Virus record (IMG/VR): IMGVR_UViG_3300024054_000362
Location: 157,423-221,422 of that record
Reading direction: 5' to 3' (one strand)
DNA length: 64,000 nt
A model generated the notes under the pieces. It was not told the origin of the DNA. It searched no databases and worked only from the letters and a program-made list of their open reading frames with translations. This document shows, one piece after another, positions 2,321 through 24,416 of this stretch. Made by a program: the position numbers and the translations under genes. Within the stretch, counting starts at the first letter, position 1, and each line of letters begins with the position of its first letter.

Positions 2321-3272
2321 GGCGCCTCCCACGCAACACCGCCGTGGTGGCGAACTTTTTTGCGAGACGGATAGCACCGTAACCAAGGCCGACGAAGCCG
2401 CCTACGAGAAGGAGGCCCGCAAGAAACTGTCGACCGCTCGTTTGTGCGGGCTGCCCAGGTACGTTTGTGCAGATCGGCAGACTGGCGGACCAAACTGGAC
2501 GCAGGCTTTGCGCAATGATGCCGTTGGCGTCGTAGACCGGATTGCCGAAGACCTTGCGAGCGCGTTCGATCAGTTGCTGACCTTCGAACGAATTTGCGTC
2601 CAAACCAAGCTTTCGAAACTGCGCCGTCTTCCAGTGATCGACACCGGGAATTGGCCCAACCCAGTAACTGCCGCCCGACTGCGTGCAACCTGTCCGTTTT
2701 TTGCCGAATGCCTCACACAAAACTCGTTCCATCGGAACCGGGAAGAACGCGCGAAACTCAAGGCCGTCCTGATCGTCGGCGCCGAGGTTGATGTTCTCGC
2801 TCTTGCCGCTCATGACGAGATCGGCGAGTAGAGTTGTCAGAACGCTTGGATCGCGACTTGTTGCTGCGAAGCGGTTGCCGATGTTGCCGTGACCGGGAAC
2901 GTTGATCTCGCCGTAGAGTTTGGACGGCTGTGTAAACAGGAGCAGGCCGTTGACGTCCGTCTTGCGGCGCGCGGCCTGGTTGACGGCGACCTCGCCGACG
3001 GCGACACGTTCTTCGACGGTGCCGTCACCGACCTCGCTGTGCATATAGCGCGCGAGCGTATACGTCAACAGTGTGAGCGGCTTGTCAGCAGGCCAGAAGC
3101 CAGATGCTTGGAGCTGTTTCTCCGCGCTCGCACGCATGGCTTCCGGGTCGCAGCGAATCTCTCCTAGCTCGTCGGTACGACAGCCCGAATTCAGGATTCG
3201 AAGATCGGCGGGACCACCGCGCATCGGCGCGAACTTCGGGTGCCACGTCGGGTAGCAATCAAGCACGGCCAT
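2304..3272 (-). CDS. SleB/Hydrolase_2-like cell-wall hydrolase with C-terminal TM anchor
   Basis: TLARYMHSEVGDGTVEERVAVGEVAVN resembles the SleB catalytic Glu helix; ends TM + VLRGRRRERRR. Confidence 0.65.
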   Translation of the reverse strand: MAVLDCYPTWHPKFAPMRGGPADLRILNSGCRTDELGEIRCDPEAMRASAEKQLQASGFWPADKPLTLLTYTLARYMHSEVGDGTVEERVAVGEVAVNQAARRKTDVNGLLLFTQPSKLYGEINVPGHGNIGNRFAATSRDPSVLTTLLADLVMSGKSENINLGADDQDGLEFRAFFPVPMERVLCEAFGKKRTGCTQSGGSYWVGPIPGVDHWKTAQFRKLGLDANSFEGQQLIERARKVFGNPVYDANGIIAQSLRPVWSASLPICTNVPGQPAQTSGRQFLAGLLLVGGFVGLGYGAIRLAKKFATTAVLRGRRRERRR

Positions 3273-3957
3273 AGCGCCTCCGTCGACCAAGCGTCATCGC
3301 GGCGCCTTTGGCGAAGCGCAGTGCGAGCCAGCTGAGTCCAACGAGTGTACCGAGCGCAGCGACGCCGACGAAGAAATCGCGTGTCGCGTGGCTTGTCTCT
3401 TGAACGGTGACCGCCGTCTGAGGACGATCGCGGAACAGCGGAATGCCGAGTGTCTTCGCGTTCGCGACCACCGATGCCGAATAACCGTCGACAGGGAGCC
3501 ACGGCTCGGCGGGGATTCCAACGCCGAAACCGAAATCAGAGAAGAAGCCCGTCGACGGCTTGCCAACGGCCTGTACGACAGCTGCGGTCAACGATTGCGG
3601 CACGAACAGATCGAAGTGGAGATGCGGTCCACCAGAGAGACCCGTCGAGCCTGAAAGGCCAATCTGTTGGCCCTTGGTGACCGCTTGACCTTGAGAGATC
3701 TGTGCTTGCGAAAGGTGCAGGTAGCGCGAGACGACGCCATCGGCGTGTGTGAGCGCGATGAAGATGCCAGCATCACTAGAGTCGGTTGGGACGACGCGCG
3801 TTGCAACGCCGTCAGCTGCAGCAAGGATCGGTGTCCCGACGGCCAACGGAATGTCAAGCGCGGGATGAAGTCCGGTCGCGCGCTGCGACCAACCGTCCAG
3901 CACTGTCAACGTGACGTTGCTGGGGGCGACGCGACCGAGATCGGGATCGAAAGCCAT
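3259..3957 (-). CDS. M23 metallopeptidase with C-terminal TM anchor
   Basis: HPALD (HxxxD), GTPILAAADG, YLHLS, GPHLHF (HxH); ends TM + TLGRRRRYGRA. Confidence 0.9.
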   Translation of the reverse strand: MAFDPDLGRVAPSNVTLTVLDGWSQRATGLHPALDIPLAVGTPILAAADGVATRVVPTDSSDAGIFIALTHADGVVSRYLHLSQAQISQGQAVTKGQQIGLSGSTGLSGGPHLHFDLFVPQSLTAAVVQAVGKPSTGFFSDFGFGVGIPAEPWLPVDGYSASVVANAKTLGIPLFRDRPQTAVTVQETSHATRDFFVGVAALGTLVGLSWLALRFAKGAAMTLGRRRRYGRA

Positions 3958-3958
3958 T

Positions 3959-4597
3959 TCATGCTCGACGACGGAAGTACTTGGGCGTGCGGTGGTTGCG
4001 ACTGAAGCGACGGCGGCCGAATCCTGCCCGATGCTTGGGTTTGCCGAAACCTTGAGCAATCGCAATCGTCGGCGTGATGATGGGGAACAAGGCTCCGAAG
4101 ATACCCCAGACGATCGCCCAGCCCACGCTGTCGTTGCGTTTGTAGCCGTGATAGACGCTCGCCGCGAACGACGCCGTTGCGAGGACGCTCCAGATTATAC
4201 GAACGGGCGTTGGTAGTCGCTTGAAGATCGTCGTGATACCGTTCGCCTTGGCAAGTGCCGCGTTGATCTGATTCGCCTGCGCGCCAAGCTTCACGGCACG
4301 CAGAGCGACATCAGAGCGATCACTGGCGTCGGGGATTGTCTGAAGAACCGCAACGGCTTGATCGAAGTTTTCAGTAGTCCCGAACTGTGTAATCAGGTCC
4401 AAAAGTCGTTTCGCGAGCGTATTCTTGTCGTCTTCGGTAAGCGCTCCTAAACCATTGAAGTGAACATCACCGTCGGGCGGCAGATCCCACGGGACTTTCT
4501 GAATGCTTCCGCCCCCGCCGGTGACGAAGACCGTCTCGTGCGGATGGACGGGGTAGAGGGTCTCGATACCAAGGGGCGTCGACACGGCGGCGAGCAT
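3959..4597 (-). CDS. membrane protein (MLA leader, GLG motif, two TMs, Arg tail)
   Basis: MLAAVSTPLG...NGLGA; two hydrophobic helices; AGFGRRRFSR tail. Confidence 0.7.
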   Translation of the reverse strand: MLAAVSTPLGIETLYPVHPHETVFVTGGGGSIQKVPWDLPPDGDVHFNGLGALTEDDKNTLAKRLLDLITQFGTTENFDQAVAVLQTIPDASDRSDVALRAVKLGAQANQINAALAKANGITTIFKRLPTPVRIIWSVLATASFAASVYHGYKRNDSVGWAIVWGIFGALFPIITPTIAIAQGFGKPKHRAGFGRRRFSRNHRTPKYFRRRA

Positions 4598-9084: not shown

Positions 9085-9085
9085 G

Positions 9086-9700
9086 TTACGCCGCCCTGCG
9101 ACGACGCGCCATCACGACGCCGACGGTGATCGAAGCCGCAACGATCGCGCCTGTGATCACGAGTGCGAAGAAGCGCTTGGGAGGCGATGGCGTCGCATCG
9201 GCGAGCATCATCTTCTTGCGCCGGGGGATTACAACCACGCCGACGCGGTCACGGAACTGCCAGCGCTGATCGAATTCGCGGCGTGAGATCGTGCGACGAT
9301 TGCCGCGAACGTTCGGGTCCATAACGACCACGTTGGTCGGCTTCACCTTGGTGGCGACGACGAAGTGGCCTTGGCCTGGACGTGTGAAGCTGCGGATCGC
9401 TACGATCACTGGAACATCGCTGTTGGTGTACGACCCCAACTCGTCGATGTTGCTGAAGCGCCGTGTCTGTGCGAAGTAGTTGCGTCGACGGGCGGCCATC
9501 GTGACCTGCCATGCCGTGGAGCCCGCCTTGGGATCGATGCCGATTTCGCGGATCAGAGTCGACTCGTCGACGTGATCGCCCCAGTGTCCCATCACCGCCT
9601 TGAGTGCGGCGGCACCGCACGAGTATGGCTGGATCTGTTGGTAGGGCGCTACCTCACCCAACCCAGCATCACCAAGACCTTGGGATTGTAGTGCCAACAT
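9086..9700 (-). CDS. C39-family cysteine peptidase with C-terminal TM anchor
   Basis: QQIQPYSCGAAAL (Q, C), GHFVV (H), VMDP (D); stand-alone, no ABC transporter; starts MLALQSQGLGDAGLG. Confidence 0.85.
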   Translation of the reverse strand: MLALQSQGLGDAGLGEVAPYQQIQPYSCGAAALKAVMGHWGDHVDESTLIREIGIDPKAGSTAWQVTMAARRRNYFAQTRRFSNIDELGSYTNSDVPVIVAIRSFTRPGQGHFVVATKVKPTNVVVMDPNVRGNRRTISRREFDQRWQFRDRVGVVVIPRRKKMMLADATPSPPKRFFALVITGAIVAASITVGVVMARRRRAA

Positions 9701-10694: not shown

Positions 10695-10697
10695 GAG

Positions 10698-10958
10698 TTA
10701 CCGATGGCGACGGCGACGGGCGATCTTCTTGAGGGCCATCATCTTGCCGCCGCTTCCGACGACCTTGTACGACGTCTTGCGCCCGCGCTTCAGCGGACAG
10801 ACGCGGATTTTGCCGACGGGGCAGTAGCGACCTTTGCCCTTGTAGCGGCGGCCACCGATCTTGATGCTGCAGTCGCTGGCCGTGAACGTTCGGCAGTAGG
10901 CCGACTTGCCGTGCCGAGCAGCCGTGAACCGACGACGACGCTTTCTGCGCTTTGCCAT
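10698..10958 (-). CDS. small Arg/Lys-rich protein
   Basis: MAKRRKRRRR...ARRRRHR, four Cys. Confidence 0.6.
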   Translation of the reverse strand: MAKRRKRRRRFTAARHGKSAYCRTFTASDCSIKIGGRRYKGKGRYCPVGKIRVCPLKRGRKTSYKVVGSGGKMMALKKIARRRRHR

Positions 10959-10997
10959 ACCCTATCCATACCATCGATCGCGCACGGGAAGCGAGTT

Positions 10998-11013: not shown

Positions 11014-11075
11014 GGGGGTACCGTTCAGGCACCTCGCTCGACTTCGTCGAGCCCGGCTACGGCTAGGAGGCGATC

Positions 11076-11426: not shown

Positions 11427-11435
11427 AGGGACCCC

Positions 11436-11828: not shown

Positions 11829-11835
11829 TCGGAAC

Positions 11836-12327: not shown

Positions 12328-12336
12328 GAGGCACAC

Positions 12337-12519: not shown

Positions 12520-12616
12520 ACGGACTGTCAGTTCACGATCCGAATGCCGACCGGTGAGCAGATCATCGTGGTTGGTCCGTGTCCGACGGCGCTGACCCAA
12601 CCCGTCAACGCGTTGA

Positions 12617-13306: not shown

Positions 13307-13345
13307 CGTTGAAATCGGCGGTGAGGATCTTCATCATACCGTTCG

Positions 13346-13996
13346 ATGCAGGTGATCGTCAGCATGACGTCGATTCCGGCGCGCAACGGCCGACTCGCGT
13401 CGACGCTCGCCTCGTTGCAATCACAGACACGGCTGCCAGACGAGATTCGGCTCTACCTCGGGCCTGGATGTGCGCTCGTCGCAGACGTGACGTGCGTCGA
13501 TGTTGAAGATCGCGGGCCGATCACCAAGTTGTCAGCGGTCGTGGATCCAGAAATTCCTGACGACGCGTTGATTGTTACCGTCGACGACGACATCCTCTAC
13601 GAACCGACTTGGCTGGAGACGTTGGTGGCTGCCGCTGAAGCGTCGCCGGGAGCGGTAGTTGGACGTTCGGGCTGGTTGGTTGCAGACTTCCTGCGTAGCG
13701 AGCATCACGGCTACTTCATCTGGGCGCAGGAAGACACGTGCGACGTCCTAGAAGGCTGGGCGGGCGTTGCCTATCGCAAGAGCTTCTTCGACGGATCCGT
13801 ACTCGAACCGCCGCCGGAGTTTCGACTTGTCGATGACGTTTGGATCTCTGGTTACCTCTATCGGCGTGGTATCGAACGTCGCATCGTTCGTCCACCGATG
13901 GCCATCCCCGATCCGAAGGGTCTGCCGGGTCTTCACAACAGGTCTGACTTCGTCAAACTCAACCGCAAAGCCGCACGGATCGCCTTCGCACCATGA
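13346..13996 (+). CDS. GT-A glycosyltransferase
   Basis: VSMTSIPAR, DRGPITKL, IVTVDDDILY, VDDVWISG. Confidence 0.85.
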   Translation: MQVIVSMTSIPARNGRLASTLASLQSQTRLPDEIRLYLGPGCALVADVTCVDVEDRGPITKLSAVVDPEIPDDALIVTVDDDILYEPTWLETLVAAAEASPGAVVGRSGWLVADFLRSEHHGYFIWAQEDTCDVLEGWAGVAYRKSFFDGSVLEPPPEFRLVDDVWISGYLYRRGIERRIVRPPMAIPDPKGLPGLHNRSDFVKLNRKAARIAFAP

Positions 13997-15204
13997 ACCC
14001 TATCAAGCTGTCCATCTGCATCAGTTCGCTCAACAGTCGGCACGCAACGTTGCACCGTCTCGTACGGCAGCTCCAGACACAACCACGTAGCGACGAGATC
14101 GAGATCCTGATCGCTGCCGACGAGCGACGACATCCCACCGGTGCCAAGCGCAATCGGTTGGTGGCTTCTGCCGTTGGTGCCTACGTCGTTCACATCGACG
14201 ACGATGACATGGTTGCGGTCGACTACGTCCCCAAGGTACTTGCTGCGATCGATGCGAATCGTGGCGTCGACGTCATCCTGCTTCGCGGTCGCCGTACGCA
14301 TGTGGGTGGAGCTGCAGTCGTGTTCGACTATCGGCTCGGCGGTGAAGAAGGCGAAGTCGACAAGAACGGCGTCCTCTGGCGCAACCCGGCCCATTTGTGT
14401 CCCATCCGTGCGGACATCGCCAAGTCGGTTCCGTTTGAGGAGATCTGGTTCGCTGAAGATGTTCGTTGGCTCGAACAGGTCAAGCCTCTTCTCAAGACCG
14501 CTGCGCGCGCAGGCACACCTAACGAAGTGCTCTACAACTACCTATGGGAACCTAACAAGGACGTCTATATCTCCATGGTCACCGATCCGAAAGCCCCCAA
14601 GCCCGTCATGAAGATCGGCGGCGTCGTCATCGCAAACCCGGCAGCGACCGTCGACGTTTCCGATCACGAGTGCATCTTCGCGCCACAGTACGTCGAGCGA
14701 TCAGGACCCGGCTCGACGGTCGAATTCAGTGCGCCGTACCGCGAGTTTCTGCGCAACTTCATCCGCGATCTGAAGATCCGTTCGATCGTCGATCTCGGCT
14801 GCGGTGACATGACCATCATGTCGAACGTCGACATGAACGACGCGCAATACCTAGGACTCGACGTCATTCCCGAACGCATCAAGCGCAACCGCGTGAAGTG
14901 TCCGCAGCTGGCTTTCGAGCATCGCGACATTCACAAGGGGCCGTTCCCGGCTGCGGACCTCTTCATTTGCAAGGATGTCGTCCAACACTGGTCGAACGAG
15001 GACATCCAAGGCTGGCTCGTCGATCTGCGAAGGGCACACTTTCGCTTCGCGCTCGTTACAAACTGCAACTACGGGCCGACGGTCAACACCAAGATCGCGA
15101 CCGGCGGCTGGCGTGCAATCGACTTGACCAAATCGCCGTTCTCCGTCGGCGAAGTCGTCTTCACCTGGGGCAACAAGGATGTCGTCCTACTGCGAGGCAT
15201 GTGA
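13993..15204 (+). CDS. GT2 glycosyltransferase fused to class I SAM methyltransferase
   Basis: GAKRN, HIDDDD, AED in N-half; SGPGS, VDLGCGD, KDVVQHW in C-half. Confidence 0.85.
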   Translation: MNPIKLSICISSLNSRHATLHRLVRQLQTQPRSDEIEILIAADERRHPTGAKRNRLVASAVGAYVVHIDDDDMVAVDYVPKVLAAIDANRGVDVILLRGRRTHVGGAAVVFDYRLGGEEGEVDKNGVLWRNPAHLCPIRADIAKSVPFEEIWFAEDVRWLEQVKPLLKTAARAGTPNEVLYNYLWEPNKDVYISMVTDPKAPKPVMKIGGVVIANPAATVDVSDHECIFAPQYVERSGPGSTVEFSAPYREFLRNFIRDLKIRSIVDLGCGDMTIMSNVDMNDAQYLGLDVIPERIKRNRVKCPQLAFEHRDIHKGPFPAADLFICKDVVQHWSNEDIQGWLVDLRRAHFRFALVTNCNYGPTVNTKIATGGWRAIDLTKSPFSVGEVVFTWGNKDVVLLRGM

Positions 15205-15752
15205 TGCATCTCCACGAAATTCTCACTGCCGAGTTCAACCGTTTCGGCAACGCACCGCTCAACATCATCGAGACCGGTACGATTCGCGGCGACAGTGAGG
15301 CGTCTCGCCTCGGTGACGGCTGGTCGACGCTCTGGTTCGCAGAGCGTCGTGCGCGATGCGGCGGTGAGCTGCTCTCGATCGACCTGGACGTGTCGACGGC
15401 GGCAACGGTGCTCGCCGAGCACGGCGTCGCGGATGGCGTCGAACTGGAACAAGGCCACAGCATCGATCGTCTGGCGTTCCGTTGCCGTCGAGGTCGACGA
15501 TGGGACGTCATCCTTCTCGACAGCGACAACGACGCACAGCTCATCCTGCACGAGTTTCTGATCGCGCAGCACCTCGTCACCGATGGCGGTCTCGTCATGA
15601 TCGATGACGTCCGTATGCCGAACCAACCGATCGGCGCCCTCAAGGGCGATCAGGTATGGCCCTACATCAAGAAGCGCGGTCTCGCGCATCACATCGTAGA
15701 GCGTGAAGGCTGGAACGGTTATCGCACGGGCGTACTCACCGTCCAGCTGTGA
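15204..15752 (+). CDS. class I SAM methyltransferase (Methyltransf_24-like)
   Basis: IIETGT, SIDLD, ILLDS, GGLVMIDD, KG; TGATG coupling. Confidence 0.8.
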   Translation: MHLHEILTAEFNRFGNAPLNIIETGTIRGDSEASRLGDGWSTLWFAERRARCGGELLSIDLDVSTAATVLAEHGVADGVELEQGHSIDRLAFRCRRGRRWDVILLDSDNDAQLILHEFLIAQHLVTDGGLVMIDDVRMPNQPIGALKGDQVWPYIKKRGLAHHIVEREGWNGYRTGVLTVQL

Positions 15753-16148
15753 CTACTGGCCGGGGTTGTACGTGTCCGCGTCGCCGGGTCCCACGATCGA
15801 GTGTGGATCCCAGAAGAGCACGTTCGGTGTCACTGTCACCGGTGGCGAGCTGGTGTTGGTGAACGTGACCTTTACGGTGTTGGTCGCTGGGTCGACGAAC
15901 GGCTCGCCGTGGGTGATGCCTGTCCAGTCCGATAGCGGCGCCATCGGGATCACCTGGATACGCGACGCCGGAAGGGTACCGTCGGCAGGTCCCGGTGGTG
16001 CCACTGTCACACCGAGAGGCGGTTCGCCGATCGACTCGCTCTCGAACGACCTGTTGACCTGGGTGAGACCGGTGTCGATGGTCGTCACGCCGCCCGCCAG
16101 CGTCATGCGCTGACGATTCCAGAGAAGCTGTCCTGCCTTCTTGCTCAT
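15753..16148 (-). CDS. hypothetical beta-rich protein, paralogue B
   Basis: MSKKAGQLLWNRQR...GPGDADTYN; inverted paralogue of 11436-11828. Confidence 0.75.
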   Translation of the reverse strand: MSKKAGQLLWNRQRMTLAGGVTTIDTGLTQVNRSFESESIGEPPLGVTVAPPGPADGTLPASRIQVIPMAPLSDWTGITHGEPFVDPATNTVKVTFTNTSSPPVTVTPNVLFWDPHSIVGPGDADTYNPGQ

Positions 16149-16212
16149 GGTTTCTCCTGTGCCGTAGCCGGATCCCGCAAAATGCGGGACGAGGTTCCAT
16201 GAAGCTACACCC

Positions 16213-16228
16213 GATCGCGCGAGCGATC
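16213..16228. promoter_or_regulatory. GATCGC-N4-RCGATC palindrome
   Basis: GATCGCGCGAGCGATC; on minus strand followed after 5 nt by TAGCTT. Confidence 0.7.
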
Positions 16229-16910
16229 AACGCCGCCTACGATAACGTCGACCTACGCCCGCGCTGCCGTGCCGCTTGGCGCGCCAACGGGACACGCCAT
16301 ACACGATTCCGGCACCGAGCCCAGCAAGCACAACGGCCGCGCCGGCTCCGACGAGGATCGGATGGTCGAGGGCGAACTGGGCCGCCGGATGCTTGTTGAG
16401 GAAGATCGCTGTGTCGAGGACAGGAATCAGCTTATCGACGCCGGAGCCCGTCGAAGTAGCTGGCGCAGAACCGTCAGCGGGTACGGGTGCCTTGGCAGCT
16501 TCTTGCGCCTTCAAGGTCTGAAGGCGTTCGATCACCTGTGGAAGTGCAGGGTCCTGTGCGATCTGAAGAATCGTGTCGAGGTGCGGTCCGGCTTGCGTGA
16601 GGATCTGTTGGAGCTTCGCAAGCAGCTCGGGAGCCTGCTGCACGATGGCGGCGATGTCGCTGGTGATGTCGCCAAGGCCGTTCGACATGAAAGGCAGCCG
16701 CGCAAGGCGGGACTGCAAATCGAAATCGTCATCGGTCGACCACACCGTCGGCCAGTTCTTGGGCTGACCTGGGATCGCGCCGACGCCGGCAAGGCCGGGG
16801 GGTTGCGGGATGAAATGGAAGACGCGACCAGCGCGTGCGATCGCGTCTTCTTGCGCATCGGTCGAGAGCACTCGCACGGAGCCGCCAAGCTGATGTTGAA
16901 GTGCGAGCAC
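16227..16910 (-). CDS. membrane protein (MLA leader, GLG motif, TM, Arg tail)
   Basis: MLALQHQLGG...NGLGD...TM...AGVGRRYRRRR. Confidence 0.7.
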   Translation of the reverse strand: MLALQHQLGGSVRVLSTDAQEDAIARAGRVFHFIPQPPGLAGVGAIPGQPKNWPTVWSTDDDFDLQSRLARLPFMSNGLGDITSDIAAIVQQAPELLAKLQQILTQAGPHLDTILQIAQDPALPQVIERLQTLKAQEAAKAPVPADGSAPATSTGSGVDKLIPVLDTAIFLNKHPAAQFALDHPILVGAGAAVVLAGLGAGIVYGVSRWRAKRHGSAGVGRRYRRRR

Positions 16911-16927
16911 GGTCCAAGCCTATCATC

Positions 16928-16943
16928 GATCGCGCGAGCGATC
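16928..16943. promoter_or_regulatory. GATCGC-N4-RCGATC palindrome
   Basis: GATCGCGCGAGCGATC; on minus strand followed after 5 nt by TAGGCT. Confidence 0.7.
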
Positions 16944-16996
16944 ACGACTCAGCCTTTGTGCTTCCCCATCGCGGATCCCGTAGTAGGGTCGCCGAC

Positions 16997-17578
16997 ATGA
17001 CGATCGAATCTCTCATCGTTGCGATCCTTGCCATCACGGGCACAGCAGCGCCGCACACGTCCAAGAATGCGCGCGTGCACGCAGAGAGCGCACAGGCAGT
17101 CGCCACCGTCGATTTCCCGGTCGAAGTTCTCCTCGGTACGGCCTACGTCGAATCGCGCTTCTATCAGACGGCGCTGAGTCGGTTGGAGGATTGTACGGAT
17201 CCGAAGGATCCTAAAACCTGCATTCGAAAGACCGGCGTGTGGGCCAGCCATGTACCGCCGCCGACGGCGCGACCGGACTGGTACTGTGGGCCGCTACAGA
17301 CGGGCGGCTGGGTCACGTGGGCCGAGTGTCAGCGGATGCGGACGGACGTGCTGTACGGTTACCAGCAGGGCGTGCGCGAGCTGACGAAGTGGTGGAACGA
17401 TCCGAGCTGTTCGCGACTACCGGATGACGATCGGCTGCGTTGTACGCTTGCCGGACACAACGCCGGGTATGCAGGTGCGGCGAACTACAAGGTCTCGCCG
17501 TACGTTCGTGACGTGTTCAAGGCGCGCGATCGGATCGTGAAGATCACCGAGCACGAAGAGTTGAAGCCGGGTAGCTAG
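16997..17578 (+). CDS. SLT-like lytic transglycosylase with signal peptide
   Basis: AYVESRF, CGPLQ, LAGHNAGY; hydrophobic N-terminus. Confidence 0.65.
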   Translation: MTIESLIVAILAITGTAAPHTSKNARVHAESAQAVATVDFPVEVLLGTAYVESRFYQTALSRLEDCTDPKDPKTCIRKTGVWASHVPPPTARPDWYCGPLQTGGWVTWAECQRMRTDVLYGYQQGVRELTKWWNDPSCSRLPDDDRLRCTLAGHNAGYAGAANYKVSPYVRDVFKARDRIVKITEHEELKPGS

Positions 17579-17904
17579 CGGCGCTTCTTGCGGCGGCTCT
17601 TGCGCTTGCGCGAGCGGCCGAGATTCGTGGGACAGAGACTGCCGTGGTAGAGCAGCGTGCCGGCAGGGTATCCACGGTTTTGCCGAGTCTGATTCCGCTC
17701 GGTGTACCAGTCGACGACCTTACGGTTCGTCGAGGACGAACACGGCACGTAGCATTGGATGTCGCCGCGCTGGCTCGGCTTCCCCGACGCCATCGCGACG
17801 TCGACGCACTCGCGCGTACTGAGGCCGTGGCGCTGCGCGGCGCGGCGCGCGCTTTTCATTGGGCCCTTGACGATCAACGAGACGCTGTTCGCACGTGTCG
17901 CCAC
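17575..17904 (-). CDS. small basic protein, paralogue of the C-terminal domain of 20409-20924
   Basis: VSLIVKGP...DIQC...GTLLY...C..NLGRSRKRKSRRKKRR. Confidence 0.65.
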   Translation of the reverse strand: MATRANSVSLIVKGPMKSARRAAQRHGLSTRECVDVAMASGKPSQRGDIQCYVPCSSSTNRKVVDWYTERNQTRQNRGYPAGTLLYHGSLCPTNLGRSRKRKSRRKKRR

Positions 17905-17906
17905 GG

Positions 17907-18344
17907 TTAGCGTCCTGCGGTGCGGTTCTTGGTGCGGCCCGCGTAGCGGTAGAGCGCGACGCCGAACACTGCGAGCGCACCACCGACGGCGAGCGCGCCA
18001 CCGGCGACGAGCATGTTCGAAACCGTCGGGCTCTGGTTCGCGAGGAACGAGTCGATGCCGCCGAACTGACGTCGGTAGGGGATCACGGTCTGGCCTCCGT
18101 TGATGGACGTGAAGTAGCTGGGGTCGCAGTAGTCGCAGACAGGTCCGCGTGCGGGGTAGCGGCGGCGGTACATCTGCGGCGTGCCGCCGGGGCCGTAGAC
18201 CGGTGTCGCGACGCGGGTCGGTCCGACGATGGCCTGATGTGGCGCGAGCGGCTGACCAGCCGATGGAAAAGACACCGTGGGCTCGTCGCGCAGCCCTGCG
18301 AGCTGCGCGTCACTGAGACCTTCCAAGGTGAATACGTGGGGCAC
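17907..18344 (-). CDS. membrane protein with C-terminal TM and basic tail
   Basis: QFGG followed by hydrophobic helix and RYAGRTKNR. Confidence 0.6.
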   Translation of the reverse strand: MPHVFTLEGLSDAQLAGLRDEPTVSFPSAGQPLAPHQAIVGPTRVATPVYGPGGTPQMYRRRYPARGPVCDYCDPSYFTSINGGQTVIPYRRQFGGIDSFLANQSPTVSNMLVAGGALAVGGALAVFGVALYRYAGRTKNRTAGR

Positions 18345-18392: not shown

Positions 18393-18926
18393 TTACTTAC
18401 GTCGCCGCCCCCGTAGTGGCATGTCGGGCGGGAAATCGAACTTGCCGGTCGCGGCCCACGTGCCACAGGCGGCGTTTGCCTTGGCGACCGCATCCATGGG
18501 CGAGTCGACGTCGACGCGCACACCGGGCTGCTTGTCCGTGGTGCAGAAGCGCAAGAACGGTTGGCCCTTGTCGAATGCAAGTTGAACTGGGCAACCCTTG
18601 CGCTTGAGCGCACCTGCGCACGGCTTGGGACAGGGGCGTGGCTTTATCTTGCCCTTGTGCTTGCCCTTCTTGACTTCGTACTGGCCACACGACTTCCCGT
18701 CGACGGAATCGACGCTCTTGCTCGTCGAACGGAAGCTGCGGTTGAGGTCGAACTGCGTGACGGCAACGCGGCTCTCGCCAACGATCGTACACGCATTGGC
18801 GTCGACCTGTCCCGTTCGACCTGACTTGGCGCCGACAACGACACGAAGACAAGGCACGCTTGACGTGTCTGGCTTTGGCTTCTTGATCTTCTTGGGCTTG
18901 GTCGTGGTCGTTTGGGATTTCGCCAT
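18393..18926 (-). CDS. Lys/Cys-rich basic protein
   Basis: KPKKIKKPK start; ends PLRGRRRK. Confidence 0.65.
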   Translation of the reverse strand: MAKSQTTTTKPKKIKKPKPDTSSVPCLRVVVGAKSGRTGQVDANACTIVGESRVAVTQFDLNRSFRSTSKSVDSVDGKSCGQYEVKKGKHKGKIKPRPCPKPCAGALKRKGCPVQLAFDKGQPFLRFCTTDKQPGVRVDVDSPMDAVAKANAACGTWAATGKFDFPPDMPLRGRRRK

Positions 18927-18934: not shown

Positions 18935-20308
18935 TCAGTGAAGAGAGTAGTTGACGATCTCACCGGGAGCGATCCAACAAGCGCGACAGCCCTTGCCGTC
19001 CGGTCCGCCGAGACCTGGCGGTGCTACGGCTTTGCGACACGTGTGCTTCGCGTCTTCGGTCGCATACGCTTGGCAGTTCCACGTGTAGCGAGGATCGGGA
19101 CCCGTCATCTTCGGCTCGAAGCGTTGGGCATGTTGATAGACGTACTGCTCGCGCTCCGGCGTCATGCCGCGGTTCTGTTCGACTTGCAGTACGACCGTCG
19201 CGCCCGCCCAGCCAGGACCGAGATGCTGTCCGACGGGGTCGTAGCCTTCGATGCGACGATTCCAGCCGGGACCGGGTTCGTTCACTTCGTACGCGCTCGG
19301 TCGGATGATGAAGTTGCGCGGATCGCGGTTGATGTCATTGACCGCGTCGGTACCCCATTCGGTCGCCCAGATGCGCGACGGCGCCCAGAACGTGATGTCA
19401 GGAAGGCGATCTGCGATCATCTTCCACTGCTGCAGGTATTCAGGTTCGAAGAAGTCGCCCGAGTCGTGGATCCGAAAGAAGCGCCGACCGGTCGGTTCAG
19501 ATGGCAGCGCTTGCGTCTTCTCGACGACCTTCTCTTCACCGGTCTCGGTGTTGACGATCTTCACCTCTTCCTTCACCGTGCCGCCGTTCAGCTTGTAGTC
19601 CGCGTTGTTGATCGCGTAGACCATTGTCTCGACGAACGCGGTCGACGGTCCGTACGGGCCTTGAACATTGAACTTGATCGCTTGCCGCGCCCACAGGAAC
19701 CGAAGGATCTGCGCGAACTGCACTTGGCCCGTCGAGTACTGTCCACCCTGCGCGTAACAGAACTGGCAGATGGCCTGCGCCAGGTTGACAGGCGCGTTGT
19801 ACGGTCGACCGAGACCGTAGTTGACGTACTTCGCTGCTTTGCGCAGTGCATCTGCGGGAACGAGGCTTTGTCCAGCGACCGCACCAGGGCACGCGCCACC
19901 GACTTGCGGCGGTCCTGCAGGGATGCTCCACGACGGCGTGTTCATCTTCGACGTCCATGACAGAAGTTGGTACTGCTGGACGTTGGGGTTGGTTGCAGGA
20001 TTCCACGCCGGGCCAGGCCCGATCGGCTGATCGAGCACGACGTAGACGTTGCTCGGATCCTTGCCGTGCACGTTGCCGGGACGGACGACAAACTGCTTGG
20101 TCTCCAGACTACGGATGACGGCGTCACGTACGAACATCATGCCGAGCAGCCCAGCATGCGCATCCGCGAGAACAGCACTGGGCGCAGGACAGGCCGGATG
20201 ATCCTCACCGAGGTACGCGCCGTTCATCGACCCGACGCACATATCGTACGCACGTTCGATGGCGGTGACGTCTTCGGTGACTTCGAGGTGCGGAATGATG
20301 GCTGCCAT
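18935..20308 (-). CDS. Gp88-like protein (radical-SAM-related Fe-S protein)
   Basis: SKM..PSWSIPAG, ACPGA, ICQFCYA, FRIHDSGDF, FWAPSR. Confidence 0.7.
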   Translation of the reverse strand: MAAIIPHLEVTEDVTAIERAYDMCVGSMNGAYLGEDHPACPAPSAVLADAHAGLLGMMFVRDAVIRSLETKQFVVRPGNVHGKDPSNVYVVLDQPIGPGPAWNPATNPNVQQYQLLSWTSKMNTPSWSIPAGPPQVGGACPGAVAGQSLVPADALRKAAKYVNYGLGRPYNAPVNLAQAICQFCYAQGGQYSTGQVQFAQILRFLWARQAIKFNVQGPYGPSTAFVETMVYAINNADYKLNGGTVKEEVKIVNTETGEEKVVEKTQALPSEPTGRRFFRIHDSGDFFEPEYLQQWKMIADRLPDITFWAPSRIWATEWGTDAVNDINRDPRNFIIRPSAYEVNEPGPGWNRRIEGYDPVGQHLGPGWAGATVVLQVEQNRGMTPEREQYVYQHAQRFEPKMTGPDPRYTWNCQAYATEDAKHTCRKAVAPPGLGGPDGKGCRACWIAPGEIVNYSLH

Positions 20309-20408
20309 GGTGTTTACTCGGTGATGCGGTAGCGGTCGCGACCCCGACGATCGAACAAGTTCCCCGAGTTGGGGCGTACGCCTTCGCGAAGATTTGGTGC
20401 ACGCATCT

Positions 20409-20924
20409 TCAGCGCCTCCGCTTGCGACGACGACGTGTGCCGTCGAGCGCGCTCAGGCACGAACCTCCGACGTACAGCAGCGAGCCGGGCGAACTCCAGG
20501 TCCGCTGCGTCGAACGGTTGGGACGGCTCGCCCTGAACCACTTGTCGAGGCGATCACGCGTCGATGGTGTGCAGGCGGTGAAGCACTGCACGTCCTTGCC
20601 GTGGGTCACGCACGACGACATCGGGATGCCGTAGCGCGCCGCCTCACGCTGGACGCTCTTCTTGGGGCCCTTCGCGATCAGCGAGACGTGCTCGCGGCGC
20701 TTCGCGGTGCCGAGGCCGCGCGAGCCGCGCCCACCCTTGACTTTGACGGACACGACGTTGCGATCGTCGGCAATGCCGGGCGTACCGTGCTTGCCACCCA
20801 TGTTGAGCACCCAGCCACCATGCGATGAACGCATGACGGCGGTGCCCGTGCGCTGTTGGCCTTGTGGCGTGACGATCGTAACGCGATCACCGGGCTTGAT
20901 GACCTTGATCAGTGGATTCGCCAT
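20409..20924 (-). CDS. two-domain basic protein with GLG linker and Arg tail
   Basis: N-domain, RGLG linker, domain paralogous to 17575-17904, LDGTRRRRKRRR. Confidence 0.65.
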   Translation of the reverse strand: MANPLIKVIKPGDRVTIVTPQGQQRTGTAVMRSSHGGWVLNMGGKHGTPGIADDRNVVSVKVKGGRGSRGLGTAKRREHVSLIAKGPKKSVQREAARYGIPMSSCVTHGKDVQCFTACTPSTRDRLDKWFRASRPNRSTQRTWSSPGSLLYVGGSCLSALDGTRRRRKRRR

Positions 20925-20926
20925 GG

Positions 20927-21331
20927 CTAGCGCCTCGCTTTCCGACGGCGTCGACGGCCGAGACCGTTGTTGCGATTGACGAGACAGTTCTCCGCGAACT
21001 CGCCCGCCGCTTTGCGGATCAGGCCTGCGTGCGACGGCGCGCTCGCACGACCGCCCGCGCTCTGGTGTGCGAGGTACTGACCGTAGTGCGTCATCATCTC
21101 GGCGTAGTCAGCCCACGCCGCACCGCACTTGCCGTTGCGCGACTTGTTGGTGACCATCGCGATCGAGTATCCGATGTCGTCGGACGCCTCGGTCATCTTC
21201 TTGGTGTGGATCGCCTCGGAGCTGCCAAGCCCGCGACGTGAACGCTTACGGCGTTGTGCATGGCCCTTCATACGACGCTCGTGCGCTTTGCGTTTGTGGA
21301 ACGCGCGAGAACGCGTCTTCTTGTTCGCCAT
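20927..21331 (-). CDS. Arg-rich protein
   Basis: Arg-rich leader, RRGLG, core, NGLGRRRRRKARR. Confidence 0.65.
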   Translation of the reverse strand: MANKKTRSRAFHKRKAHERRMKGHAQRRKRSRRGLGSSEAIHTKKMTEASDDIGYSIAMVTNKSRNGKCGAAWADYAEMMTHYGQYLAHQSAGGRASAPSHAGLIRKAAGEFAENCLVNRNNGLGRRRRRKARR

Positions 21332-21333
21332 GA

Positions 21334-21612
21334 CTAGCGCTTCGCCTTCCGGCGACGACGGCGACGACCGACGCCGCCGCCGACGTTGTAGCACTCGTTG
21401 CGGTTGCACTCGGCGATCGTCCGTTGCATGCCAGGCAGCCCTTCCTCGACGCGACAGACCGCGTTCGGGAACTGGCGCGAGCACGCGTGGCCGGCATCCA
21501 TCGCTGCGCTGTATGACTTGTGGAGGCTGCGTCGATAGCCCGAAGGGCCGCTGACGACAAATCGTCCCGACGACGAGCCGAGTGACTTCCTACGACGACG
21601 TTTCTTCGCCAT
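21334..21612 (-). CDS. Arg-rich protein
   Basis: MAKKRRRRKSLG, four-Cys core, GVGRRRRRRKAKR. Confidence 0.65.
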   Translation of the reverse strand: MAKKRRRRKSLGSSSGRFVVSGPSGYRRSLHKSYSAAMDAGHACSRQFPNAVCRVEEGLPGMQRTIAECNRNECYNVGGGVGRRRRRRKAKR

Positions 21613-21614
21613 GG

Positions 21615-21854
21615 CTAGCGGCTCCTCTTCTTCTTCTTGCTCTTGCCCTTCTTGCGACGACGGCGCCCGAAGTTGACGGGGCACGCGCGCTCGTGGATGC
21701 GTGTGTCGACGTCGCCGACGTTGAGTCGGCGACGGCCGCCCGGGAGGATGACCGTGTGACGAGCGTCGACCTTGCGACGCGTCGCCGTGATCGTCTCGGC
21801 GTCGAACGCGAAGCAGGCGCCGATCGGAAGCTGTCGGAACGTACGCGCTGGCAT
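21615..21854 (-). CDS. Arg/Lys-tailed small protein
   Basis: Ends CPVNFGRRRRKKGKSKKKKRSR. Confidence 0.6.
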   Translation of the reverse strand: MPARTFRQLPIGACFAFDAETITATRRKVDARHTVILPGGRRRLNVGDVDTRIHERACPVNFGRRRRKKGKSKKKKRSR

Positions 21855-22117
21855 CAACGTCTCCTCTTTCGCGTGCGTCGACTGCGTCCGGCGATTTGGA
21901 GTAAACACACCGGACGAAGGCCGAAGGTCCGCTGGTACTTCTGCCGTAACTTGTCCTCCATCTTGATGCGTGCGTCGGTGCAGTCGGTCGCGGCCACGTC
22001 GACATAGACGTGTTCGGTCCCGACCGTCTTGACCTTGAGGCCTGCGCGACGAATCTTGCGACTCATCTCGACCACGGTGACGGGACCCGTGTGGACCTTC
22101 ATTCGGAAGATCGGCAT
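21854..22117 (-). CDS. Arg-tailed small protein
   Basis: Ends IAGRSRRTRKRRR; TGATG coupling at both ends. Confidence 0.6.
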   Translation of the reverse strand: MPIFRMKVHTGPVTVVEMSRKIRRAGLKVKTVGTEHVYVDVAATDCTDARIKMEDKLRQKYQRTFGLRPVCLLQIAGRSRRTRKRRR

Positions 22118-22176
22118 CAGCGACGCCTCCTGCGCGCACGCTTGCGTTTGCCGAGTCTGTAGGTAACGCCTACGGA

Positions 22177-22374
22177 CTAGCGACGGCGGCGCTTGCGCCA
22201 ACGCGTGCCGCAGACCTTCGTGCCCCGCGCGGTGCGGATGCAGATCTTGCGACCCTTGCGGCGACCCTTGCGACCGCGGCGACGGCGACCGACGAGGGTG
22301 GGGAGAGCGCCCATGTGGCGACGACGACGGCGGCGACGCTTGCCGAGACCGTCGCCCTGATTCGAGGTGTCCAT
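22177..22374 (-). CDS. protamine-like Arg-rich protein
   Basis: MDTSNQGDGLG-KRRRRRRRHMG-ALPTLVG-RRRRGRKGRRK...; start inferred from AAGGA RBS. Confidence 0.6.
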   Translation of the reverse strand: MDTSNQGDGLGKRRRRRRRHMGALPTLVGRRRRGRKGRRKGRKICIRTARGTKVCGTRWRKRRRR

Positions 22375-22443
22375 CTTCTTGGTCCTTGTTGAAGTTGCCC
22401 CACAAGTCGGCGACGCCGTCTCGATGGGTGTTTCTTTCAAGAA

Positions 22444-22489
22444 GATCCCACGAGCGATCGAGGTCGTCAAGATGATCGCTGCTGCGATC
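22444..22489. promoter_or_regulatory. two GATCGC-N4-RCGATC-like sites
   Basis: GATCCCACGAGCGATC (22444) and GATCGCTGCTGCGATC (22474) between the Arg-rich operon and the divergent HTH gene. Confidence 0.55.
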
Positions 22490-22550
22490 GGTGTCATGGA
22501 AGCAGACGCCCAACGGTCACGATTGAAGGTACAGTTACGGCTCCAAACCG

Positions 22551-23258
22551 ATGAAACCGTTCAAACCTGGTAGCGATCCGCGTAAAGTCTTCAAAGGAGA
22601 ACACCGCGAACGAAAGCCAACTCGACTGTTCACGTTTGATGACCTTGCTACAGCGGCTGTCGAGGCGCCAGCAACGACACGCAAGAAGCTGCGAACGACG
22701 ACGAACGCGAGGACCGTAGCGCTCTACATCGTTGACGCACTGGCCCGTGGCTCTGTCCGACTTTCGGACGAAGAAGCTGTGCAAGCGCTCGCAGGAGCCG
22801 CGACGTTGAAGGAATGGCGAGGTCGTTGGCCACGCTTCGATCTATATCGATGCGGCTACCCCGACTGCGTGAACACGCTCCTCGATGCTGGCCTGTGTGT
22901 TAGCCATGGTGGGTCGGCTCGGCCGACCGTGAAGATTGAGGGTGACCACTTCGTGATGTGGACGGGCCGAGCGTACACACCGATCTGTCGGGTGATTTTT
23001 GGCGTGATCGATTCGGGTGCGGTCGAGCACATTGATCAGAACAGCTGGAACAACCACCCCGACAACCTCATCGCGCCCGCCGACGTTCACGTCCGTTCGA
23101 CGAGACGCAACCGTTGGTCGTATGGCTACGCCGAGCTGGGTGACCTGTTCGGCTTATCGGTCGACGGCACACGACAAGCTGCGTCGCGTGGACTCTTCGA
23201 TCCGGCGTCGCTCGACAGCGTGACGAGCTTCTGGTTCCTTCGACAGACCCCGCGTTAG
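22551..23258 (+). CDS. putative DNA-binding protein (HTH-like ends, HNH-like centre)
   Basis: EHIDQNSWNNHPDNL HNH-like motif; YAELGDLFGLSVDGTRQ HTH-like segment; CxxxxC...C..H. Confidence 0.55.
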   Translation: MKPFKPGSDPRKVFKGEHRERKPTRLFTFDDLATAAVEAPATTRKKLRTTTNARTVALYIVDALARGSVRLSDEEAVQALAGAATLKEWRGRWPRFDLYRCGYPDCVNTLLDAGLCVSHGGSARPTVKIEGDHFVMWTGRAYTPICRVIFGVIDSGAVEHIDQNSWNNHPDNLIAPADVHVRSTRRNRWSYGYAELGDLFGLSVDGTRQAASRGLFDPASLDSVTSFWFLRQTPR

Positions 23259-23525: not shown

Positions 23526-24416
23526 TCACTCTCCTCCCAAGAACGTATCATCGGAAACGATCAGGACCGCCGGTCGAAGTCCTCGACGTTCAGCGGTAGC
23601 ACCGACAGCGTGACGTTCGTGGACAGGCGCGATGGTCGCCCAGCTGTAGAGGTCGCGAACGTACTCATGGTCGCTGTTGGACGCGACGATTGTGGCACCG
23701 CGATCGTGTGCGGCACGAAGGGCCGTGGCGAGCGTGACGTGATCGTCGTCGGAGAAGCCTCCCGCCGTGTACTTGTCGAACGTCTCGTAGTAAGGCGAGT
23801 CGGCGTAGACGACGTCACCTGCTTGCGCGGCAGCGATCGTATCTCGGAAATCGGCGTGGCGAACGTCGGCGCCGCGAAGGGCGTGCGCGACGATCGCCAG
23901 GCTTTCGGCGGTGGGAACGCTCGCGCGACTGCGATCACCGCCGTGCGGGACGTTGAACTTGCCCTTGCTGTTTTCACGGTAGAGACCGTTGAAGCCGAAC
24001 CGGTTCAGGTACAGGAACCGAGCCGCCGCGAGGACCGGGCTACGCGACTCCTCGGCGCGGATGCGGATGTAGCTCTCTTTGTCGGTGCCACGATCCACGA
24101 GCGTCTTCAGCGCCCACGCGACCGATGCGGAGGTCTTCCGGATCGTCTGATACATCGAGATCAGCGGCTTGCAGTTGTCGCCGAGCACCATGTCAGGAAG
24201 CCCGAGATCGAGCGCGACCGCACCGCCACCGAGGAACGGTTCGACGTAACGTCCTCGGGTGACGGCGAGTCGTGCATGAATCGCGGGCGCCAAGAGCGGG
24301 ACCAGCCATCGTTTGCTTCCGACCCACTTGAGTGGCGGGGTGCAGCCGACGCGCGGTGGAAACACGTTCGCTGTGGGAACGGTCGATAGCGGGTTGGGCG
24401 TTGCGGTCGTCATCAT
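23526..24416 (-). CDS. dam: Dam-family DNA adenine methyltransferase
   Basis: PLKWVGSK, YVEPFLGGGAV, FNGLYRENSKGKFNVP; motif IV reads DSPY. Confidence 0.85.
   Translation of the reverse strand: MMTTATPNPLSTVPTANVFPPRVGCTPPLKWVGSKRWLVPLLAPAIHARLAVTRGRYVEPFLGGGAVALDLGLPDMVLGDNCKPLISMYQTIRKTSASVAWALKTLVDRGTDKESYIRIRAEESRSPVLAAARFLYLNRFGFNGLYRENSKGKFNVPHGGDRSRASVPTAESLAIVAHALRGADVRHADFRDTIAAAQAGDVVYADSPYYETFDKYTAGGFSDDDHVTLATALRAAHDRGATIVASNSDHEYVRDLYSWATIAPVHERHAVGATAERRGLRPAVLIVSDDTFLGGE

What the first reader, a model, noticed from the sequence alone, without database searches (positions are those of the whole stretch)
20409..22374. Operon of six small Arg-rich, Cys-containing proteins
Six tightly coupled genes each have a short Cys-bearing core with polycationic ends, and one is protamine-like. 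A further example lies at 10698-10958. Inference: genome-condensing core proteins, or membrane-active cationic peptides.
Basis: inference. Interest (0 to 1): 0.6.

Follow-up and report, generated by a model that had tools for sequence, protein, structure and literature searches.

The report
Arginine-tailed small-protein cassettes in a jumbo phage
A lake-water jumbo phage carries a fast-shuffling row of six small, cysteine-paired proteins that each end in a poly-arginine tail; the same tail marks about twenty of its proteins and most likely keeps them on DNA, perhaps as cargo packed and injected with the genome.

Summary
Six translationally coupled minus-strand genes (22374-20409; 65-171 aa, pI 11.5-12, net charge +16 to +27) each end in a disordered Gly-(Arg/Lys)8-16 tail, and two also start with a polybasic leader. 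None matches Pfam, PHROGs or PDB.

New findings:
- The tail is proteome-wide in this 221-kb phage: 21 of 363 predicted proteins, against about 1 expected.
- Tail charge is conserved between orthologues while the codons change.
- Tailed proteins have even cysteine counts (17 even, 3 odd) against 126:130 for the rest. All operon proteins in six genomes have 2, 4 or 8 Cys, widely spaced with no CxxC. This points to disulfide staples and an oxidising destination.
- The locus keeps its place (Dam/HNH to a GP88-like gene) in five relatives, but modules are swapped, reordered and fused.
- The modelled cores are folded, at high to moderate confidence: SH3-like and ferredoxin-like in F, a small beta domain in C. 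E is helical in the ESM Atlas model.

Best reading (about 0.38): a functional analogue of the T-even internal-protein locus, that is, diverse small proteins sharing only a short tag, held on DNA in the head and ejected. Rivals are cytoplasmic nucleic-acid binders, envelope-active polycations and protease-removed pro-regions. An antimicrobial-peptide reading is disfavoured. No expression or virion data exist.

The parts
22177..22374 (-). Gene A: 65 aa, protamine-like (45% R+K, net +27), 2 Cys spaced by 9 residues. It is the first gene of the array in all six genomes.
   Evidence: orthologues in L004, L005, L026, L049, L050
22375..22550 (-). Conserved upstream region shared with the divergent HNH-like gene. 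It holds TTGACG, three CGATCGC boxes and four GATC sites, and is a putative promoter/operator.
   Evidence: six-genome DNA alignment with long invariant blocks
21854..22117 (-). Gene B: 87 aa, 2 Cys, tail G-RSRRTRKRRR. No orthologue was seen in the relatives examined.
   Evidence: only a weak PHROG hit (phrog_30201, E 0.049)
21615..21854 (-). Gene C: 79 aa, a small beta domain with 2 invariant Cys (residues 14 and 58) and a 17-residue Lys/Arg tail. In other phages it is fused behind the Fn domain.
21334..21612 (-). Gene D: 92 aa, polybasic leader followed by LGSS, a core with 4 conserved Cys, and tail G-RRRRRRKAKR.
20927..21331 (-). Gene E: 134 aa, a long polybasic leader followed by GLGSS, a helical core with 2 conserved Cys, and tail G-RRRRRKARR.
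20409..20924 (-). Gene F: 171 aa with two domains. Fn (residues 1-65) is an SH3-like barrel carrying the HGGWVLNMGG motif. A GLG linker follows. Fc (about residues 75-160) is ferredoxin-like with 4 Cys. The tail is disordered.
20314..20406 (-). 30-codon ORF in the gap between F and the GP88-like gene. It is absent from relatives, where the last cassette abuts GP88. Probably a remnant.
18935..20308 (-). GP88-like gene (457 aa), the conserved downstream anchor of the array.
22551..23258 (+). Divergent HNH-like gene (235 aa), the conserved upstream anchor. The Dam-type methyltransferase lies just beyond it at 23526-24416 (-).
10698..10958 (-). Solitary member of the class: 86 aa, polybasic at both ends, 4 Cys.
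17575..17904 (-). Paralogue of the Fc module (109 aa, 4 Cys) with a 13-residue tail.
18393..18926 (-). 177-aa basic protein with 8 Cys, ending RGRRRK. It is conserved just downstream of GP88 in relatives.
9086..9661 (-). Peptidase_C39 domain followed by a C-terminal TM helix and RRRR. A candidate processing protease (speculative).
3259..4059 (-). Peptidase_M23 followed by a C-terminal TM helix and G-RRRR tail, representing the membrane-anchored tailed class. A second M23 lies at 8497-9084 (-).

Best explanation
The six genes form a cassette array of small, unrelated protein modules. The modules that could be modelled are folded, and the even, widely spaced cysteines suggest disulfide staples. 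All share one thing: a disordered polycationic tag, Gly-(Arg/Lys)n at the C-terminus and sometimes also a polybasic N-leader. The tag is a proteome-wide address label in this phage lineage. Its most likely action is plain electrostatic binding to a polyanion, above all DNA. I read the locus as a functional analogue of the T-even phage internal-protein (IP) locus. On this reading the modules travel with the phage DNA inside the head, where they add counter-charge. The paired cysteines are inferred to become disulfides in the oxidising outside world. The modules are then ejected into the next host to act early, in anti-defence or takeover. The rapid swapping of modules reflects an arms race. Shown: the genes, the tails, selection on tail charge, the Cys parity, the synteny with shuffling and fusion, and the modelled folds for F, C and E. 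Inferred: DNA binding, disulfide formation, packaging, ejection and effector roles.
For: 1. The tail is enriched 20-fold or more at C-termini across the proteome. Its charge is kept between orthologues through many synonymous Arg-codon changes.
2. The tag can sit at either end (leaders in D, E, the 10698 gene and a GNAT-like protein). That fits position-independent electrostatics rather than a C-terminal export signal.
3. Cys parity: 31 of 32 operon proteins in six genomes have 2, 4 or 8 Cys. Genome-wide, tailed proteins are 17 even to 3 odd against 126:130 for the rest (Fisher p 0.002), and a size-matched control holds. Spacings of 9, 24, 43 and 46 residues with no CxxC argue for disulfides rather than zinc. 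That implies an oxidising destination, yet B-F have no signal peptide.
4. The locus keeps its place in L004, L005, L026, L049 and L050, but module content and order differ and modules fuse. Junction DNA (tail, stop, ATG GCG AA) is 79-83% identical between successive junctions. The T-even IP locus is described in the same terms: diverse injected defence proteins sharing only a short capsid-targeting tag (PMC3012670).
5. The Fn module also occurs inside large multidomain proteins of up to 1181 aa, two of them with RadC or DUF2958. The Atlas model of D weakly resembles YodL, LPD11 and LPD16 clusters. Two proteins with weak, sub-threshold GNAT matches carry the tag. GNAT, RadC, YodL and LPD domains are themes of injected 'polyvalent proteins' (PMC5512222, PMC7824862).
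6. F and C model as compact domains with disordered tails.
Against: - There is no direct evidence of expression or virion location. Only DNA runs hold the sequence.
- The operon lies inside the replication and nucleotide-metabolism gene block, on the same strand, not next to recognisable structural genes. Those could not be located at all.
- Tailed phages load internal proteins into the prohead before DNA enters, so a DNA-binding tail cannot by itself explain loading. An acidic scaffold partner would be needed and none was identified.
- Disulfide formation is inferred from parity only, because model coordinates could not be inspected. No phage thiol oxidase was found.
- Links to polyvalent-protein domains are weak (TM about 0.5; 2 of 46 proteins).
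- Many tailed proteins are C-terminally membrane-anchored wall enzymes, which fit a virion-cargo model only if they are ejection proteins.
Confidence: 0.38

Rival explanations
1. Cytoplasmic nucleic-acid binders that are not packaged. The tails hold the modules on host or phage DNA or RNA inside the infected cell, for nucleoid takeover, coating of phage DNA against nucleases, or RNA chaperoning.
For: The operon sits among replication genes on the same strand. SH3-like (KOW/Tudor/Sm) and ferredoxin-like (RRM/ACT) folds are common in nucleic-acid binders. Poly-Arg binds nucleic acid generically. Cassette turnover fits anti-defence or takeover genes.
Against: The even-Cys bias with long spacings and no CxxC is not expected for proteins that stay in a reducing cytoplasm. 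The fold matches reach only Z about 7, which is fold level only.
Confidence: 0.25
2. Extracytoplasmic or released polycations. The modules act on the cell envelope or on anionic wall polymers, either in the periplasm or wall zone or after lysis.
For: Cationic proteins with paired Cys are typical of secreted proteins. Other tailed proteins are envelope enzymes: two M23 peptidases and a C39 peptidase. A neighbouring GDSL lipase at window 1565-2320 carries the same C-terminal membrane anchor but no poly-Arg tail. Tail-anchored proteins also lean towards even Cys counts, 17 to 6.
Against: B-F have no signal peptide, lipobox or hydrophobic or amphipathic segment. The modelled cores are globular domains, not peptides. 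In the membrane proteins the tail lies on the cytoplasmic side of the TM helix by the positive-inside rule, so there the tag is cytoplasmic.
Confidence: 0.12
3. The polybasic ends are pro-regions or linkers of a polyprotein-like system. A papain-fold protease, possibly the phage C39 peptidase at 9086-9661, would cut after a small-hydrophobic-Gly motif and release bare cores. This can combine with any of the location models.
For: Gly occupies the position before the tail in 12 of 41 tailed proteins genome-wide and 14 of 26 in related operons, against a background of 7.7%, with Leu, Val or Phe before it. A GLG tripeptide marks module junctions in many fused homologues from divergent phages. A C39 peptidase is conserved near the locus in L026 as well.
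Against: Gly is also the usual helix or strand cap before a disordered tail. The motif is partly inherited through homology. C39 enzymes characteristically need Gly-Gly (established knowledge of double-glycine leader peptidases). No cleavage data exist.
Confidence: 0.1
4. A by-product with no function. Arg runs would arise from CGN-repeat slippage in GC-rich DNA and from Shine-Dalgarno sequences embedded in gene ends.
For: AGG is three times commoner in tails than elsewhere. The last 3-4 tail codons overlap the next gene's ribosome-binding site. Alternative frames of this 61% GC genome are Arg-rich.
Against: Tails run to 8-17 residues, far longer than a ribosome-binding site. They also occur at ends with no coupled downstream gene. 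Charge is conserved through synonymous turnover. Enrichment is specific to termini and is linked to Cys parity.
Confidence: 0.04

Closest known systems
T-even phage internal proteins (IPI, IPII, IPIII and the polymorphic IP locus; PMC3012670, citing Repoila et al. 1994)
   Same: Both are an array of small, basic, mutually unrelated proteins that share only a short terminal tag. Gene content varies between close relatives and junction DNA is conserved. Compact folded cores are a further parallel: IPI* has 76 residues.
   Different: There is no sequence similarity. The T4 tag is a roughly 10-residue N-terminal capsid-targeting sequence removed by the prohead protease, whereas here it is a C-terminal poly-Arg run. 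T4 internal proteins are Lys-rich and lack the paired-Cys signature. Packaging is proven for T4 and unproven here.
Protamines and adenovirus core proteins VII and Mu
   Same: Both show extreme Arg content. Gene A is 45% R+K, with Cys that could cross-link as in eutherian protamine P1 (own knowledge). Adenovirus core precursors are basic and are trimmed at Gly-containing sites by a papain-like protease (own knowledge).
   Different: No homology was found (no Pfam hit). B-F are mostly folded domains with only a terminal Arg run. The hosts are bacteria. Condensation has not been shown.
Polyvalent proteins of phages and conjugative elements (Iyer et al. 2017, PMC5512222)
   Same: Both show combinatorial shuffling and fusion of many small uncharacterised domains. 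Delivery with the DNA is predicted for both. The Fn module occurs in giant multidomain proteins, and RadC, DUF2958 and weak GNAT-like matches appear in the same sets.
   Different: Here the modules are mostly separate genes, each with its own tag. No LPD, MuF or metallopeptidase domain was detected by sequence. The structural resemblance of D to YodL, LPD11 and LPD16 is weak (TM 0.48-0.55).
Cationic antimicrobial peptides and defensins
   Same: Both are small and cationic with an even number of cysteines.
   Different: There is no signal or pro-peptide and no amphipathic or hydrophobic face. The domains are SH3-like, ferredoxin-like or helical, with the charge concentrated in a disordered tail.

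Membership tests
T4-type internal proteins | Sequence membership in known internal-protein families | tested here: not met
   No PHROG or Pfam family for A-F at E <= 0.1, apart from one chance-level hit for B. No tblastn match for F in 50,697 GenBank phage records.
T4-type internal proteins | N-terminal capsid-targeting sequence cleaved by the prohead protease | tested here: not met
   The N-termini of A-F share no common leader. D and E have polybasic leaders and B, C and F have none. No prohead protease was identified.
T4-type internal proteins | Presence in the head and ejection with the DNA | not testable with these tools
   The phage is uncultured and known only from lake-water DNA runs.
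Protamine / protamine-like nuclear basic proteins | Homology to protamine families | tested here: not met
   The Pfam scan of gene A returned nothing and the PDB sequence search returned nothing. Only the composition is alike.
Protamine / protamine-like nuclear basic proteins | Condenses DNA | not testable with these tools
   Needs a DNA condensation assay with purified protein.
Polyvalent proteins (Iyer 2017) | Several conflict-related domains in one polypeptide, including known LPD, MuF, ParB, ART or peptidase domains | tested here: inconclusive
   A-F are one- or two-module proteins without Pfam LPD hits. Of 46 long Fn-bearing proteins, one has RadC and one DUF2958, and the rest have nothing. 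D shows only weak structural resemblance to YodL, LPD11 and LPD16 clusters.
Cationic antimicrobial peptides / defensins | Secretion signal and an amphipathic or Cys-knotted peptide fold | tested here: not met
   No N-terminal hydrophobic segment in B-F. F and C model as globular domains. No defensin-type family hit.
Zinc-ribbon / zinc-finger nucleic-acid binders | Paired CxxC or CxxH ligand motifs | tested here: not met
   Cys spacings are 9, 24, 43 and 46 residues in A, B, C and E, 8/15/4 in D, and 8/3/37 in F. There is no CxxC and no Zn-domain Pfam hit.
PEP-CTERM / LPXTG-type sorting signals | Signature motif, then a TM helix, then an Arg-rich end, with an N-terminal signal peptide | tested here: not met
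   A-F have no TM helix. The TM-bearing tailed proteins lack an N-terminal signal peptide, and no PEP or LPXTG motif is seen before the helix.

The most novel reading that the evidence does not exclude
The poly-Arg ends work as cell-penetrating tags. The disulfide-stapled modules would be released at lysis, survive outside the cell, and enter neighbouring uninfected bacteria to disarm defences ahead of the progeny phage. This would be a virus-encoded, trans-acting 'public good' delivered without a secretion system or a virion.
Probability: 0.05. Interest if true: 0.92.

Novelty: new variant of a known kind. Interest (0 to 1): 0.62.

Why it matters
If the tag really loads or holds about twenty different proteins on the phage DNA, it would be a second, mechanistically different solution to the problem T4 solves with its capsid-targeting sequence. 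It would be a very simple one, a run of arginines, and could be reused to load foreign cargo into phage heads.

It would also define, by sequence alone, the 'cargo proteome' of an uncultured jumbo-phage lineage. That set includes a pool of a dozen or more fast-shuffling small domains that are good candidates for new anti-defence or takeover factors.

The link between tail and even cysteine count is a cheap computational marker. It can be applied to the thousands of huge-phage genomes now in databases.

The Fn domain (776 clusters at 50% identity) is a widespread domain that no Pfam or PHROGs model matched.

Tried and rejected
- Family and structure look-ups gave nothing for A-F: Pfam and PHROGs, PDB sequence search for A-D, and megablast and tblastn against GenBank phages.
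- Foldseek against PDB for F gave no hit at E <= 0.001. VIA-align gave only fold-level matches at Z about 7. For C the best Z was 2.4.
- The ESM Atlas feature search gave nothing usable for E and only sub-threshold leads for D. The 'atlas' fold library was not available.
- I could not place the structural module. Twenty large proteins scanned in PHROGs gave no capsid, sheath or clear portal hits. Pfam Phage_capsid, Phage_sheath_1 and Phage_portal were absent from the genome.
- The search for a phage disulfide system found no Erv1/Alr and no DsbA, only a sub-threshold thioredoxin-like match.
- Promoter-motif mining was swamped by CRISPR repeats. The sigma-70 consensus scan found nothing upstream of A.
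- There is no RNA run for this phage, so read laying was not used and expression stays untested.
- Tandem Repeats Finder missed the CRISPR array. The repeat finder showed it.
- Rejected ideas: zinc-finger proteins (no CxxC), ribosomal-protein mimics (no family hit), sortase or exosortase signals (no motif or signal peptide), and DNA hitch-hiking through the portal as the loading route (internal proteins enter the prohead before the DNA; established T4 biology).
- Only genetic code 11 was used.
Full report
**What is there**

The window is the last 64 kb of a 221,422-bp IMG/VR virus record with about 61% GC. The sequence is held by lake-water metagenome DNA runs only. It has no close relative among 50,697 GenBank phage records. 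Its helicase is at most 31% identical to those of phages in GenBank, many of them phages of Gram-positive bacteria.

Between 22374 and 20409 the minus strand carries six genes:
- A: 65 aa
- B: 87 aa
- C: 79 aa
- D: 92 aa
- E: 134 aa
- F: 171 aa

They are spaced by 59 nt, a 1-nt overlap, and then 2 nt three times. A Shine-Dalgarno-like sequence lies in the last codons of each upstream gene. No terminator-like site stands out inside the span. The consensus scan gives two weak hits there, at 21301-21316 on the + strand and 21576-21562 on the - strand, against about six expected by chance over the scanned region.

Every product ends in Gly-(Arg/Lys)8-16. D and E also begin with polybasic leaders followed by (S/G)LGSS. 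pI is 11.5-12.0 and net charge is +16 to +27. Cys counts are 2, 2, 2, 4, 2, 4. The extra example at 10698-10958 is of the same kind. Two corrections apply: F is a two-domain protein, and the cationic part is chiefly C-terminal.

**More than chance, and more than this operon**

I predicted 363 genes in the whole genome with a self-trained codon model. Twenty-one of them have at least 6 basic residues in 8 within the last 11 or so residues. About 1.1 would be expected from the internal rate and 0.44 from residue shuffles. The six-gene operon is the densest cluster of a proteome-wide class.

The class also includes:
- two proteins of 164 and 281 aa with weak GNAT matches just below Pfam's cut-off
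- a 340-aa protein
- a set of proteins built as domain, C-terminal TM helix, spacer and poly-Arg; these carry two M23 peptidases and a C39 peptidase and have no N-terminal signal peptide

A GDSL lipase at window 1565-2320 has the same C-terminal TM anchor but no poly-Arg tail.

**The tail is selected as protein**

Between orthologues in related contigs the tails keep their length and charge while the Arg codons change freely among CGT, CGC, CGG and CGA. AGG is threefold enriched in tails, and the last 3-4 codons double as the next gene's ribosome-binding site. That explains the terminal K-x-R-R pattern but not the Arg run upstream of it. The cores evolve under purifying but rather relaxed selection (dN/dS 0.24-0.62).

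**Paired cysteines**

Every operon protein in six genomes has 2, 4 or 8 Cys. That is 31 of 32 proteins, and the one exception is an over-long call of gene A.

Genome-wide, tailed proteins are 17 even to 3 odd with 1 lacking Cys. The rest are 126 even to 130 odd with 86 lacking Cys (Fisher p 0.002). The size-matched control holds: at 200 aa or less, tailed proteins are 13:2:0 against 76:91:76. By my count from the protein lists, the soluble tailed proteins fall into about 18 independent families with even counts against one with an odd count.

Spacings are long (9, 24, 43 and 46 residues) and there is no CxxC motif. Disulfide staples are therefore more likely than zinc sites. That points to an oxidising destination, yet B-F have no signal peptide or hydrophobic segment. 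No phage Erv1 or DsbA was found.

**A shuffling cassette locus**

The same position, between a Dam-type methyltransferase plus a divergent HNH-like gene on one side and a GP88-like gene on the other, holds an array of tailed small genes in L004, L005, L026, L049 and L050.

- A is always first.
- The other modules, at least a dozen families, are present or absent, reordered, or fused. Examples are Fn+C, Fn+E, Fn+Fc, helix+D, and D plus a 130-aa extension.
- Whatever the number of modules, the polypeptide ends in one tail. Internal junctions are basic and contain GLG.
- The DNA across successive junctions (tail, stop, ATG GCG AA) is 79-83% identical. That gives recombination a foothold.
- The region upstream of A is strongly conserved. 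It carries TTGACG, three CGATCGC boxes and four GATC sites.

**Folds**

- F models with mean pLDDT 75.6. Its N-domain is a five-stranded SH3-like barrel with pLDDT about 92. Its best matches are KOW, Tudor and Sm domains at Z about 7. Its C-domain is a beta-alpha-beta-beta-alpha-beta ferredoxin-like fold whose best matches are ACT, PII and RRM-like domains at Z about 7. The tail is disordered. These matches are at fold level only.
- C is a small beta domain with pLDDT 71 and no PDB neighbour above Z 2.4.
- E is helical in the ESM Atlas model, with no informative neighbour.
- The Atlas model of D has low confidence (pLDDT 0.58). It weakly resembles clusters carrying YodL, LPD11 and LPD16 (TM 0.48-0.55).
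- The Fn domain has 776 clusters at 50% identity in a 1.84-billion-protein library. It occurs alone or inside proteins of up to 1181 aa. Of 46 long carriers, only isolated ones have Pfam domains: RadC, DUF2958, RuvA_C and HNH.

**Interpretation**

The tag can sit at either end and sits on unrelated folds. It therefore most likely acts by charge alone, on a polyanion.

Combined with paired Cys and the absence of signal peptides, the simplest common destination is the DNA-filled head of the particle. The locus then closely parallels the T-even internal-protein locus. [quoted passage not shown] It also echoes the 'polyvalent protein' theme of shuffled small domains delivered with DNA, which includes GNAT and RadC domains (PMC5512222, PMC7824862).

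I give this reading 0.38. Several things weigh against it:
- The operon lies in the replication block.
- The structural genes could not be located.
- Prohead loading needs a partner that I could not identify.
- There are no expression or particle data.

The rivals are:
- cytoplasmic nucleic-acid binders (0.25)
- envelope-acting or released polycations (0.12)
- pro-regions cut at a small-hydrophobic-Gly motif, possibly by the C39 peptidase (0.10, and compatible with the others)
- a non-functional by-product (0.04)

A classical antimicrobial-peptide reading is disfavoured.

**Membership and novelty**

The proteins are not members of any named family that I could test. This holds for internal proteins, protamines, defensins, zinc fingers and sorting-signal substrates. 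Polyvalent-protein membership is inconclusive.

I rate the finding a new variant of a known kind. It is an internal-protein-like cassette locus with a different and far simpler tag, together with a tail-plus-even-Cys signature that I did not find described in the papers I searched.

**Limits**

- Gene calls come from my own simple predictor.
- The parity argument is statistical.
- The relatives sampled are close kin.

Noticed in passing
window 60383-63999, continuing at genome 61-6250 (outside the window): The phage carries a type I-C-like CRISPR-Cas set. It comprises Cas3 HD (60383-62536), Cas5 (62664-63299) and the N-terminal part of Cas8c/Csd1 (63157-63999, open at the record end). These continue at the record start with the C-terminal part of Csd1 and with Cas7, followed by about 45 degenerate 36-37-nt repeats ending GGATAGAAAC. 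Because cas8c spans the record ends, the 221-kb record is a circularly permuted complete genome. No cas1, cas2 or cas4 was seen next to the array.
   Followed up: partly
window about 56835-56870 (-); genome 55805, 91686 and 95852 (-): Solitary copies resembling the CRISPR repeat lie far from the array. They could be stray repeats or repeat-derived regulatory or anti-CRISPR RNAs.
   Followed up: no
window 1565-18344 and genome-wide: About 25-30 proteins have a single TM helix near the C-terminus followed by a basic end, with no N-terminal signal peptide. They include a GDSL lipase (1565-2320), two M23 peptidases (3259-4059 and 8497-9084) and a C39 peptidase (9086-9661). Their topology and export route are unexplained. 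Their Cys counts also lean even, 17 to 6.
   Followed up: partly
window 20730-20924 (-), the Fn domain of gene F: This roughly 65-residue SH3-like domain carries the near-invariant motif GGWVLNMGG. It has 776 clusters at 50% identity in the 1.84-billion-protein library and matched no Pfam model. It often sits at the extreme C-terminus of large phage proteins.
   Followed up: partly
window 22400-22500: Four GATC sites and three CGATCGC palindromic boxes lie in the conserved region upstream of gene A, about 1 kb from the phage's Dam-type methyltransferase (23526-24416). Methylation-sensitive control of the operon is conceivable.
   Followed up: no
window 27658-31413 (-) and 34794-36776 (-): The 1251-aa DNA polymerase carries a LAGLIDADG homing-endonuclease segment (residues 239-415), which looks like an intein. 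The 660-aa RNR small-subunit gene also has an inserted or extra segment.
   Followed up: no
window 11436-11828 (+) and 15753-16148 (-): Two inverted paralogous genes of 130 and 131 aa with near-identical N-termini flank a block of about 4 kb that includes a 403-aa ORF. A homologue sits near a glycosyltransferase in L026. The arrangement resembles an invertible or duplicated cassette boundary.
   Followed up: no
window 51726-52931 (+) and 45796-47481 (+): There is a Prim-Pol primase-polymerase (E 1.6e-41) and a 561-aa protein with weak STAND/NACHT NTPase matches.
   Followed up: no
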